IMG/VR virus record: IMGVR_UViG_3300018080_000098
Span: 186,001 to 250,000 of that record
Reading direction: 5' to 3' (one strand)
Length of the DNA stretch: 64,000 nt
The translations under genes were made by a program, and so were the position numbers. Of this stretch, positions 63,509-64,000 are shown piece after piece (positions within the stretch are counted from its first letter, which is position 1; the number at the start of each line of letters is the position of its first letter). The notes under the pieces were generated by a model that saw nothing but the letters and a program-made list of their open reading frames with translations, was not told the DNA's origin and did not search any database.

Positions 63509-63647
63509 GATTTCGAGGACTGGAAGGTAAGTACAGAAAAACAATGATAGCTCAGTTGGTTGAGCGTCGGTATTGAGAACCGAAGGTCGCGGGTTCAAAT
63601 CCCGCTCCTTGTTACTTCGCCATTTACCTTCATACTACCTCGGAACT
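63509..63647 (+). ncRNA. Y-RNA-like unit 1: closing stem around an unpermuted tRNA fold
   Basis: TTCGAGG-ACT-GGAAGGTAAGT / ATTTACCTTC-ATACTA-CCTCGGA enclosing a cloverleaf at 63541-63612. Confidence 0.7.
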
Positions 63648-63692
63648 AAGATACAACAGCGTAACGCTGAAAGGATACATCAAAGATACAAC

Positions 63693-63843
63693 GAGCTCGC
63701 GGACTACTAGGTAATTACAGGAAATTTTCCAGGTTCAAGTCCTGGCTTCCCCATTTAAGGGGAAGTGGCCAAATTGGTAAAGGCAACAGCATTATAAGCT
63801 GTGGATAACCATCCATCAATTTACCTGGACACTACCGCGACTT
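63693..63843 (+). ncRNA. Y-RNA-like unit 2: tRNA fold opened at the variable loop
   Basis: TCGCGG-ACT-ACTAGGTAA / TTACCTGG-ACACTA-CCGCGA; order T arm, closed acceptor CTTCCCC/GGGGAAG, D arm, anticodon arm. Confidence 0.75.
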
Positions 63844-63877
63844 TAAATTTCACAGCACGAGGAGGTGCTGAGAGCAT

Positions 63878-64000
63878 AGATTTCGAGAGGACTTAGGAGC
63901 GTTTACGGTAAAGCACTTGTCTGAAAAACAAGGTATTCCTGGTTCAAGTCCAGGCCCCGCCGCTTTTATGGCGGGGTTGCTTAAAAGCACAAACCCGCTT
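63878..64000 (+). ncRNA. Y-RNA-like unit 3 (truncated by window): tRNA fold opened in the D loop
   Basis: GAGG-ACT leader; GGTAAAGC, GAA anticodon arm, T arm, CCCCGCC-loop-GGCGGGG, TTGCTT. Confidence 0.7.

What the first reader, a model, noticed from the sequence alone, without database searches (positions are those of the whole stretch)
63509..64000. Y-RNA-like array in which each unit opens the tRNA cloverleaf at a different point
Seen: three tandem units behind one promoter share a closing stem with a conserved internal loop (5' GG-ACT ... TAC(A/G)G; 3' A(C/T)ACTA-CC in the two complete units), and stem sequences co-vary. The enclosed tRNA fold is unpermuted in unit 1, opened at the variable loop in unit 2 and opened in the D loop in unit 3. 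Units are separated by ACAGC..GCTGA hairpins. Known: YrlA RNAs pair a Ro60-binding stem with a tRNA-like module, but the Ro-site consensus I recall (GNCGAA) is not this loop. Inference: a distinct tether-RNA family with a constant protein-binding handle and varied tRNA decoys.
Basis: partly seen in the sequence, partly recalled or inferred. Interest (0 to 1): 0.85.

Follow-up and report, generated by a model that had tools for sequence, protein, structure and literature searches.

The report
Array of permuted tRNA-mimic Y-like RNAs
A giant phage encodes a row of small RNAs that each join one constant stem to a tRNA-shaped body opened at a different point, just upstream of a very divergent Ro60-like ring protein, which extends the known Ro60/Y-RNA partnership to a large unannotated family in phages and bacteria.

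Summary
Window 63512-64000 holds three tandem units behind a near-consensus sigma-70 promoter. Each is closed by the same two-helix handle with conserved unpaired motifs (5' ACU and UACAG, 3' AAAYU-type loop). The enclosed tRNA fold is unpermuted in unit 1, opened at the variable loop in unit 2 and opened in the D loop in unit 3.

The window ends inside unit 3. On the parent 350-kb phage contig, a fourth unit and a terminator-like hairpin follow. Next come a 709-aa protein whose predicted fold matches Ro60/TROVE+vWA (no Pfam TROVE hit) and an ARPP-1 protein.

This RNA(s) / Ro-like / ARPP-1 module recurs in about 80 phage contigs and about 60 bacterial genomes. A covariance model of unit 2 finds full-length matches upstream of the gene, on its strand, in 54 of 68 phage loci, with strong covariation. 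It finds none in 405 kb of control contigs.

Anticodon triplets are not conserved between orthologous units, so these are tRNA mimics, not decoding tRNAs. Rfam's YrlA model and the YrlA GNCGAA motif do not match.

Best reading: a new, widespread variant of the Ro60/Y-RNA system. Binding and function remain untested.

The parts
63459..63486 (+). Sigma-70-type promoter of the array (TTGACA, 16 nt spacer, TACAAT)
   Evidence: L001 11453-11480, equal to window 63459-63486; 11 of 12 matches. for the coordinate check. The same promoter precedes the array in L002.
63512..63644 (+). Unit 1: handle enclosing an unpermuted tRNA-like body (63541-63613, anticodon triplet UGA, no encoded CCA, mismatch at acceptor pair 5:68). 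Handle 5' strand 63512-63536 (base stem, ACU loop, helix 2, UACAG). Handle 3' strand 63624-63644 (helix 2, AUACUA loop, base stem).
   Evidence: MFE -48.5 kcal/mol, z = -3.6. Orthologues carry AUC, UAU, UGC and AGU at the anticodon.
63657..63669 (+). Spacer hairpin 1 (CAGCG-UAA-CGCUG), followed by an A-rich AGAUA-type stretch. Possible processing site.
   Evidence: Hairpins at the same position with different stem sequences occur in L048, L049 and L051.
63696..63841 (+). Unit 2: handle enclosing a circularly permuted tRNA-like body opened at the variable loop. T arm 63729-63745. Acceptor stem 63746-63765, 7 bp, closed by a 6-nt loop. D arm 63768-63784. Anticodon arm 63786-63802 (triplet UAU). 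Small variable-region hairpin 63803-63814.
   Evidence: 12 covarying pairs; ARAGORN calls a tRNA after rejoining; model R1 and family-wide covariation.
63849..63874 (+). Spacer hairpin 2 (core CAGCAC / GUGCUG)
   Evidence: -11.2 kcal/mol, z = -4.1, 0 of 200 shuffles fold as well.
63884..64000 (+). Unit 3, cut by the window end (the full unit runs to about 64015 on the contig). Handle enclosing a tRNA-like body opened in the D loop. UACGG 63904-63908 supplies G18/G19. D-stem 3' strand 63911-63914. Anticodon arm 63916-63932 (GAA). T arm 63938-63954. Closed acceptor stem 63955-63976. D-stem 5' strand 63979-63982.
   Evidence: split D stem AAGC/GCUU versus GAAC/GUUC with compensatory changes; 17 of 35 pairs covary.

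Best explanation
The region is the start of an operon-like array of Y-RNA-like noncoding RNAs. They most likely belong to the Ro60-like protein encoded about 1 kb downstream, which is itself always followed by an ARPP-1 protein.

Proposed mechanism:
1. One promoter drives a multi-unit transcript.
2. The precursor is cut in the hairpin-bearing spacers into RNAs of about 130-150 nt.
3. In each RNA the paired 5' and 3' ends form a constant handle. It consists of a base stem, an asymmetric internal loop (5' ACU/ACG against 3' AAAYU-N), an 8-9 bp helix, and single-stranded UACAG. The handle docks on the Ro-like ring.
4. The tRNA-shaped module stays exposed and engages tRNA-binding proteins, either as a tether or as a decoy.
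5. Joining the handle at the acceptor end, the variable loop or the D loop leaves different faces of the L-shape free. One protein therefore gets a panel of differently presented tRNA mimics.

Shown here: the RNA structures, their conservation and covariation, the strict gene linkage, the Ro60-type fold of the protein, and the lack of anticodon conservation.

Inferred: transcription and processing, handle-to-protein binding, and the tether or decoy role.
For: 1. Partner gene. The 709-aa ORF (L001 12989-15118) was modelled at pLDDT 89.7. Its seven best PDB fold matches are all Ro60/TROVE proteins, including Thermus phage phiLo Ro60 (probability 1.0, about 550 aligned columns). ESM Atlas gives TROVE clusters by features (0.90) and by structure (TM 0.86 by target, residues 104-612). 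A MIDAS-type D-x-S-x-S (D445, S447, S449) is conserved.
2. Linkage. Model R1, built from unit 2, finds handle-bearing matches on the gene strand upstream of the gene in 54 of 68 phage loci (median gap 520 nt). It also finds them in many bacterial loci. It finds 0 hits in 405 kb of control viral contigs.
3. Structure. 92.8% of cells are paired, against 58% in shuffles and 41-48% in slid controls. All 36 pairs covary.
4. Constant handle. UACAG is 80-97% conserved per position, and the U of the 3' loop is 93% conserved, across 88 distinct units.
5. Not decoding tRNAs. Orthologous units in related phages carry different triplets (UGA / AUC / UAU / UGC / AGU in unit 1). There are 19 different triplets in 51 loops, while Y32, U33 and R37 are kept. 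Many triplets have A34. Some units carry only a hairpin in the same handle.
6. Continuity with Y RNAs. Some array units have the YrlA topology and weak full-length YrlA hits (L074 2243-2370, 37.3 bits). Known Y RNAs lie within 4 kb of Ro60 on the same strand (PMC4201824).
7. ARPP-1 lies directly downstream in 78 of 80 phage loci and in 55 of 61 bacterial loci with enough sequence (58 have a hit somewhere in the locus).
Against: - There are no expression, processing or binding data of any kind.
- The protein gives no Pfam TROVE hit and no PDB sequence hit. Its TM-scores to solved Ro60 structures are low (0.35-0.45).
- A terminator-like hairpin separates the array from the gene in this phage (seen by eye; the scan did not call it). 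So the RNAs and the protein need not share a transcript.
- ARPP-1, rather than the Ro-like protein, could be what recognises the handle.
- Unit 1 has a 7-bp acceptor stem and could be cut by RNase P like an ordinary pre-tRNA.
- Alignment A6 was fitted to the model, which inflates the pairing percentages somewhat.
Confidence: 0.68

Rival explanations
1. These are genuine permuted or flanked tRNA genes. The closing stem is an excision and ligation signal, as with the bulge-helix-bulge motif of algal and archaeal permuted pre-tRNAs. The products would be functional decoding tRNAs.
For: Rejoined units 2 and 3 are called as full tRNAs by ARAGORN. They have 7-bp acceptor stems, canonical T and D loops and 7-nt anticodon loops with U33 and R37. 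The phage carries many tRNA genes. M. smegmatis YrlA is cut by RNase P and receives CCA (PMC4201824).
Against: Anticodons differ between orthologous units of phages whose flanking protein is 88% identical, while the tRNA bodies are nearly invariant. Many triplets begin with A34. The handle is not a 3-4-3 bulge-helix-bulge; its loops of 3-4 nt and 6 nt are separated by 8-9 bp. The same handle encloses plain hairpins in about 19 of 94 units. No splicing endonuclease is known in bacteria (10.1101/312249).
Confidence: 0.07
2. The units are a structured 5' leader or attenuator that regulates the downstream Ro-like/ARPP-1 operon in cis, for example by sensing tRNA-binding factors, rather than acting as stable trans-acting RNAs.
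For: They always lie upstream on the same strand (median 520 nt). A terminator-like hairpin sits between the array and the gene in this clade.
Against: Arrays hold up to six self-contained units separated by spacer hairpins. One unit in L001 has its own promoter after a TnpB insertion. Distances to the gene reach about 1.9 kb, with mobile genes in between. Known Ro60 loci show the same layout with trans-acting Y RNAs.
Confidence: 0.1
3. The handle is recognised by something other than the Ro-like protein. Candidates are ARPP-1 or a host double-strand RNase such as RNase III, in which case the handle only releases or stabilises tRNA-like small RNAs.
For: ARPP-1 is linked as strictly as the Ro-like gene. 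Its fold matches nothing solved, so RNA binding cannot be excluded. Long closing stems are typical RNase III substrates (general knowledge).
Against: The conserved single-stranded motifs in the handle argue for sequence-specific recognition rather than generic double-strand cleavage. The Ro60 family is the one component with an established habit of binding stem-bulge-stem RNAs encoded next to it.
Confidence: 0.12

Closest known systems
YrlA Y RNAs with bacterial or phage Ro60 (Rsr); Rfam RF02553; Chen et al. 2014 (PMC4201824); Wang et al. 2018 (10.1101/312249)
   Same: Encoded next to a Ro60-type gene on the same strand. The 5' and 3' ends pair into a stem-loop-stem handle. The effector module is a circularly permuted tRNA mimic in the order T arm, closed acceptor stem, D arm. 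There are often two or more RNAs per locus, one of which lacks the tRNA module (like YrlB). A few units in related arrays have the YrlA topology and weak YrlA scores.
   Different: No YrlA model hit on the array. No GNCGAAN0-1G motif; the handle carries ACU, UACAG and AAAYU instead. The dominant topology keeps a complete anticodon arm and exits at the variable loop. Other units exit at the acceptor end or the D loop. Arrays reach six units. The protein is too divergent for Pfam TROVE. ARPP-1 is an obligate neighbour, rather than RtcB/RtcA as in Salmonella.
Deinococcus radiodurans Yrn1 / Rsr / PNPase (RYPER)
   Same: A Y RNA whose tRNA-like part has the unpermuted order (D side, anticodon-like arm, T arm), with the Ro-binding stem at the acceptor end, like units 1 and 4.
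   Different: Yrn1 keeps the metazoan-type Ro-binding helix and is only partly tRNA-like. Units 1 and 4 here are near-perfect tRNA bodies. A PNPase link was not tested here.
Thermus phage phiLo Ro60 with Yrl1/Yrl2 (PMC12135203; PDB 9KOP, 9L5Y)
   Same: A phage-encoded Ro60 with Y-like RNAs just upstream of the gene. It is among the top structural matches of the protein here.
   Different: The phiLo RNAs were picked by a CGAA motif in a large bulge, and the passages read mention no tRNA-like module. There is no ARPP-1 link.
Circularly permuted tRNA genes of Cyanidioschyzon merolae, some green algae and Thermofilum (as cited in 10.1101/312249)
   Same: The 3' half lies before the 5' half, the acceptor stem starts as a closed loop, and the termini pair in a stem.
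   Different: Those genes are matured through a bulge-helix-bulge motif and ligation into functional tRNAs with conserved anticodons. Here there is no bulge-helix-bulge motif and no anticodon conservation, and the setting is bacterial or phage.

Membership tests
Y RNA / YrlA (Rfam RF02553) | Encoded within about 4 kb of a Ro60/TROVE gene, on the same strand | tested here: met
   The Ro60-like gene starts about 1 kb after unit 3 (L001 12989). The same layout holds in 54 of 68 phage loci.
Y RNA / YrlA (Rfam RF02553) | Scores at or above the gathering threshold (69 bits) of the YrlA covariance model | tested here: not met
   No YrlA hit on window 63300-64000 even at E <= 10. Only sub-threshold hits elsewhere: window 29752-29863, 37.5 bits; L074, 37.3 bits.
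Y RNA / YrlA (Rfam RF02553) | GNCGAAN0-1G motif near the 5' end (proposed Ro60 contact) | tested here: not met
   0 occurrences in the array. Present in 2 of 94 handle-bearing units.
Y RNA / YrlA (Rfam RF02553) | tRNA-like module in the order T arm, closed acceptor stem-loop, D arm, opened at the anticodon stem, with no anticodon loop | tested here: not met
   Units 2 and 3 have the T, acceptor, D order but keep a full anticodon arm and open at the variable loop or the D loop. Unit 1 is unpermuted.
Y RNA / YrlA (Rfam RF02553) | Bound by Ro60 in vivo | not testable with these tools
   Needs immunoprecipitation or gel-shift assays.
Ro60 / TROVE proteins | Helical-repeat ring followed by a vWA domain with a MIDAS site | tested here: met
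   The AF2 model has helical repeats at 107-432 and a vWA domain at 440-600. The top seven PDB matches are Ro60/TROVE. Atlas TM is 0.86 to a TROVE cluster. D445-x-S447-x-S449 is conserved.
Ro60 / TROVE proteins | Match to Pfam TROVE (PF05731) | tested here: not met
   Only a weak VWA_CoxE hit. No precomputed Pfam domain on 120 homologues.
Circularly permuted tRNA genes (algal/archaeal type) | Bulge-helix-bulge motif at the junction of the termini | tested here: not met
   The handle has loops of 3-4 nt and 6 nt separated by an 8-9 bp helix, not 3-nt bulges flanking a 4-bp helix.
Circularly permuted tRNA genes (algal/archaeal type) | Product is a decoding tRNA, so its anticodon is conserved among orthologues | tested here: not met
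   Orthologous units differ in all three anticodon positions. There are 19 triplets in 51 loops.
Ordinary tRNA gene (unit 1 only) | Full cloverleaf above the Rfam tRNA threshold | tested here: met
   62.6 bits, 63541-63613.
Ordinary tRNA gene (unit 1 only) | Stable identity: anticodon kept between close relatives, no enclosing conserved stem | tested here: not met
   UGA, AUC, UAU, UGC and AGU occur in five orthologues whose bodies are almost invariant. The unit is enclosed by the conserved handle.

The most novel reading that the evidence does not exclude
The units form a programmable panel. The anticodon loop keeps its tRNA architecture (Y32, U33, R37) while its triplet is free to change. 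Each mimic would then imitate, or pair with, a particular host or phage tRNA species. The Ro-like ring plus the unknown ARPP-1 enzyme would act as an RNA-specified tRNA surveillance, repair or counter-defence machine, for example by soaking up or reversing attacks from anticodon nucleases or ribose-modifying toxins. The three attachment points would serve different enzyme partners.
Probability: 0.12. Interest if true: 0.9.

Novelty: new variant of a known kind. Interest (0 to 1): 0.72.

Why it matters
Ro60/Y-RNA particles are conserved from bacteria to humans, yet the partner of the tRNA-like module of bacterial Y RNAs is still unknown.

This family adds several things:
- A second, large and unannotated branch of Ro60-like proteins.
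- An obligate unknown enzyme partner, ARPP-1.
- A new handle motif.
- Natural 'experiments' in which the same handle is joined to the tRNA fold at three or four different places, with free anticodons.

Comparing which faces stay exposed could show what the tRNA mimic is for.

The module also occurs in cultured Planctomycetes (Stieleria, Novipirellula, Rhodopirellula) and in Minicystis rosea, so it can be tested at the bench.

In addition, tRNA finders will miscall such units as tRNAs with odd anticodons, or miss them entirely.

Tried and rejected
- Strict two-motif DNA pattern scan of IMG/VR. It gave 44 loci. Apart from the source contig itself, none of the other 43 contains a model R1 match. 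They are chance hits and served as a negative control.
- Sequence searches of the protein against the PDB, as a single sequence and as a profile. Only a marginal vWA match, so fold comparison was needed.
- MAFFT alignment of distant unit-2-type RNAs. It misaligned the 3' handle and was replaced by the model-guided alignment A6.
- My regex and pairing handle finder. It is noisy: 87 hits on the gene strand against 24 on the opposite strand and 15 in shuffled sequence. It was used only to pick examples.
- ARPP-1 structure prediction (pLDDT 88.8) followed by a PDB fold search. No match at E <= 0.001, so the function stays open.
- Search for further conserved neighbours such as RtcB or PNPase by clustering all ORFs of 149 loci. 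Only lineage-specific genes appeared: a DnaB-like helicase, HNH and GIY-YIG homing endonucleases, and an antirepressor.
- Search for a Ro-like paralogue inside the window. None found.
- GenBank phages. Only one unannotated metagenomic 462-kb phage carries the protein, so no cultured phage example exists there.
- Rejected ideas: a self-cleaving ribozyme in the handle (only a chance-level Twister-sister hit, E = 1.7), and a kink-turn or bulge-helix-bulge motif (sequence inspection).

Full report
**What is in the window**

Bases 63459-63486 carry a near-consensus promoter, TTGACA-16 nt-TACAAT. Three units follow: 63512-63644, 63696-63841, and 63884 onward.

Each unit begins with a base stem ending in GG, then ACU, an 8-bp helix strand, and UAC(A/G)G. 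The two complete units end with the complementary helix strand, a 6-nt loop A(C/U)ACUA, and CC plus the rest of the base stem. The 5' motif occurs three times in 64 kb, only here (0.9 expected).

- Unit 1 contains an unpermuted tRNA fold (Rfam tRNA 62.6 bits, 63541-63613).
- Unit 2 runs T arm, 7-bp acceptor stem closed by a 6-nt loop, D arm, anticodon arm, small hairpin, and back to the handle.
- Unit 3 runs D-loop GG, D-stem 3' strand, anticodon arm, T arm, closed acceptor stem, D-stem 5' strand, and back to the handle.

The partial Rfam tRNA hits agree with this order: model positions 10-63 for unit 3, and the 5' two-thirds for unit 2. After rejoining the pieces in silico with 3-6 nt (variable loop) or 7-11 nt (D loop) of native sequence, ARAGORN called a full tRNA in all 39 trials.

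The spacers hold small hairpins followed by A-rich AGAUA-like stretches.

**Beyond the window**

The window is part of IMGVR_UViG_3300018080_000098, a 349,793-bp phage contig. On that contig:

- Unit 3 closes about 15 nt past base 64000, with GCAUUA-CC.
- A broken IS605-type TnpB follows on the opposite strand, as two ORF pieces (HTH_OrfB_IS605 and the Cas12f1-like TNB domain).
- A second promoter and a fourth unit come next. That unit is an unpermuted tRNA body with a 5-bp acceptor stem.
- A terminator-like hairpin follows (seen by eye; the scan did not call it).
- Then come a 709-aa ORF and a 342-aa ARPP-1 protein (PF20208, E = 2e-33).

A relative whose flanking protein is 88% identical (L002) lacks the TnpB. 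It has five contiguous units behind one promoter, and the fifth encloses only a long hairpin. Three further relatives have 3-6 units.

**The protein**

Pfam sees only a weak C-terminal vWA hit, and PDB sequence searches see nothing useful. An AlphaFold2 model from 48 homologues is confident (pLDDT 89.7, pTM 0.83). It shows an N-terminal alpha/beta domain, helical repeats at 107-432 and a vWA domain at 440-600.

- Its seven best PDB matches are all Ro60/TROVE structures. They include Xenopus and human Ro60, the TROVE domain, and the Ro60 dimer of Thermus phage phiLo (probability 1.0, E from 1e-5 to 1e-3, about 550 aligned columns). TM-scores are only 0.35-0.45.
- ESM Atlas independently places it next to 'TROVE domain-containing protein' clusters, by features (0.90; 62 of 100 hits in TROVE sets) and by structure (TM 0.86 by target over residues 104-612).
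- A MIDAS-type D-x-S-x-S is conserved.

I conclude that it is a very divergent Ro60-family protein. Most homologues are about 530 aa, the size of Ro60. They carry no Pfam annotation and, where named, are called 'VWA domain-containing protein'.

**The module is conserved**

A degenerate-peptide scan found 80 phage loci and 69 bacterial or archaeal-binned loci. The latter include complete genomes of Minicystis rosea, Stieleria magnilauensis and Novipirellula sp..

- ARPP-1 lies directly downstream on the same strand in 78 of 80 phage loci. The two exceptions are cut by contig ends.
- Among 61 bacterial loci with enough downstream sequence, 58 have an ARPP-1 hit and 55 have it directly adjacent.
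- No other neighbour is conserved.

Rfam tRNA hits sit just upstream of the gene in nearly every locus examined, several of them truncated at the acceptor stem, and none reaches the YrlA threshold.

**The RNA family**

RNAalifold on orthologous units recovers the handle and the (permuted) cloverleaf, with 6, 12 and 17 compensatory pairs for units 1, 2 and 3. This includes the long-range D stem of unit 3.

A covariance model of unit 2 (R1) found 126 matches in 670 kb of phage loci. All but one locus match are on the gene strand. Full-length E-values are 1e-9 to 1e-18 in phages whose protein is only about 25% identical.

- 54 of 68 loci have at least one handle-bearing match upstream of the gene. 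Several of the rest show variant handles by eye (GAGAACUG...UCAG).
- Bacterial loci also match. In Novipirellula and Stieleria the motifs are GGACU...UUACAG...AACCUACC.
- Controls: 0 matches in 405 kb of unrelated viral contigs.
- On the model-guided alignment, 92.8% of cells pair, against 58% in shuffles and 41-48% when slid. All 36 pairs show double changes. The covariation score is 0.507, against 0.13 in shuffles. The alignment is fitted to the model, so these figures lean high.

Handle consensus over 88 distinct units:
- UACAG is 97, 80, 92, 94 and 96% conserved by position.
- The 3' loop is A-A-A-Y-U, with U at 93%.
- Helix 2 contains a conserved G-C pair and U-A pair.

**Topologies**

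An ARAGORN test on circularised interiors of 94 handle-bearing matches gave these approximate counts (with my reassignment of rows in which a tRNA is also found unpermuted):

| Topology | Units |
|---|---|
| Opened on the variable-loop side | about 49 |
| Unpermuted or with a truncated acceptor stem | about 16 |
| Opened in the D loop or D side | 5 |
| Opened at the anticodon (YrlA topology) | 5 |
| No tRNA fold (short hairpins) | 19 |

D-loop-opened units also occur in a Saprospiraceae genome, and a D-side-opened one in Minicystis rosea. The variable-loop type (unit 2) is the conserved core RNA of the family.

**Not decoding tRNAs**

Orthologous units have almost invariant bodies but different anticodon triplets. 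Unit 1 has UGA, AUC, UAU, UGC and AGU, and units 2 and 4 vary likewise.

Across the family, 51 of 58 loops have 7 nt. Y32 is kept in 47 of 51, U33 in 38 of 51 and R37 in 49 of 51, but there are 19 different triplets, many starting with A. The loop architecture is kept while its identity is not. No CCA is encoded.

**Relation to known systems**

YrlA RNAs are circularly permuted tRNA mimics (T arm, closed acceptor, D arm) opened at the anticodon stem. They carry a GNCGAAN0-1G motif and lie within 4 kb of Ro60 (PMC4201824; 10.1101/312249). D. radiodurans Yrn1 has the other orientation. Phage Ro60/Y-like pairs are known, from mycobacteriophages and Thermus phage phiLo, and TROVE proteins were noted in a few jumbo phages (PMC7824862).

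What is the same here: the kind of system, the layout, and tRNA mimicry by permutation.

What differs:
- The handle. There is no YrlA model hit, and GNCGAA occurs in 2 of 94 units.
- The anticodon arm is retained.
- There are two further break points.
- The RNAs come in arrays.
- The protein branch is highly divergent.
- ARPP-1 is an obligate partner.

ARPP-1 was described only as a predicted enzyme of unknown fold in NAD/ADP-ribose conflict systems (PMC9503650). My model of it (pLDDT 88.8) matches no solved structure. Its invariant residues include Q17, Q79, H81 and C102.

I found no paper describing this module. The searched library is incomplete.

**Mechanism and verdict**

The most likely reading is that the units are Y-like RNAs of the adjacent Ro-like protein. 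The constant handle would be the docking site, and the tRNA module the effector-binding or decoy part. The different attachment points would expose different faces of the L-shape.

- Shown: structure, conservation, linkage, protein fold, and non-conservation of anticodons.
- Inferred: transcription as one precursor, processing at the spacer hairpins, handle-to-protein binding, and function.
- Rivals: real permuted tRNA genes, a cis-regulatory leader, or another reader of the handle. All are less likely for the reasons given in their entries.

This is a new, widespread variant of a known kind of system.

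Noticed in passing
window 29731-29884 (- strand): Another closed-stem unit in the order T arm, closed acceptor, D arm, with no anticodon arm (the YrlA topology). It gives a sub-threshold full-length Rfam YrlA hit at 29752-29863 (37.5 bits, gathering 69, E = 1e-5) and an R1 hit (E = 2e-6). Its handle differs (AUC ... UGACA ... AAACGUCG). No Ro-like paralogue lies in the window.
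   Followed up: partly
window 29954-30029 (- strand): A further permuted tRNA-like element (T arm, closed acceptor, D arm, anticodon arm). By eye, a different stem (AAGCUC...CGAC / GUCG GAGCUU) may close it, without the ACU/UACAG motifs. It lies between a CopG-like/DUF7873 gene pair and a tRNA-like gene with an 8-nt anticodon loop at 29604-29680.
   Followed up: partly
L001 12074-12612 (about 80-620 nt past the window end, - strand); L049 from about 2140 (+ strand): IS605-type TnpB genes are inserted in or next to the arrays. The one in the source contig is broken into two ORF pieces and splits the array, and unit 4 then has its own promoter. Homing endonucleases (HNH, GIY-YIG) are also frequent around the module in other loci.
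   Followed up: partly
window 5087-5131 (+ strand): Partial Bacteria_small_SRP hit (43.2 bits, gathering 40, model positions 23-67) starting 4 nt after tRNA-Met 5010-5083.
   Followed up: no
window 31900-33450: Four near-repeats of a short motif. Read on the + strand by eye, they look like starts of small paralogous genes (roughly M-S-K-R-P-P-K-R-I-R-V-N-G-H). They are interleaved with - strand tRNA genes, some in head-to-tail pairs (33093-33018, 33011-32941, 32938-32864).
   Followed up: no
L127 (Minicystis rosea CP016211.1, 8257896-8267539): In this bacterial chromosome the Ro-like/ARPP-1 pair sits inside a very dense tRNA gene array, with about 30 Rfam tRNA hits in 9.6 kb. Several phage loci (for example L057) are similar.
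   Followed up: no
window 43237-44415 and 34491-35996 (+ strand): A nicotinamide phosphoribosyltransferase-like gene (PHROG 448) and a type IB topoisomerase-like gene. Most other large ORFs of the window have no family match.
   Followed up: no
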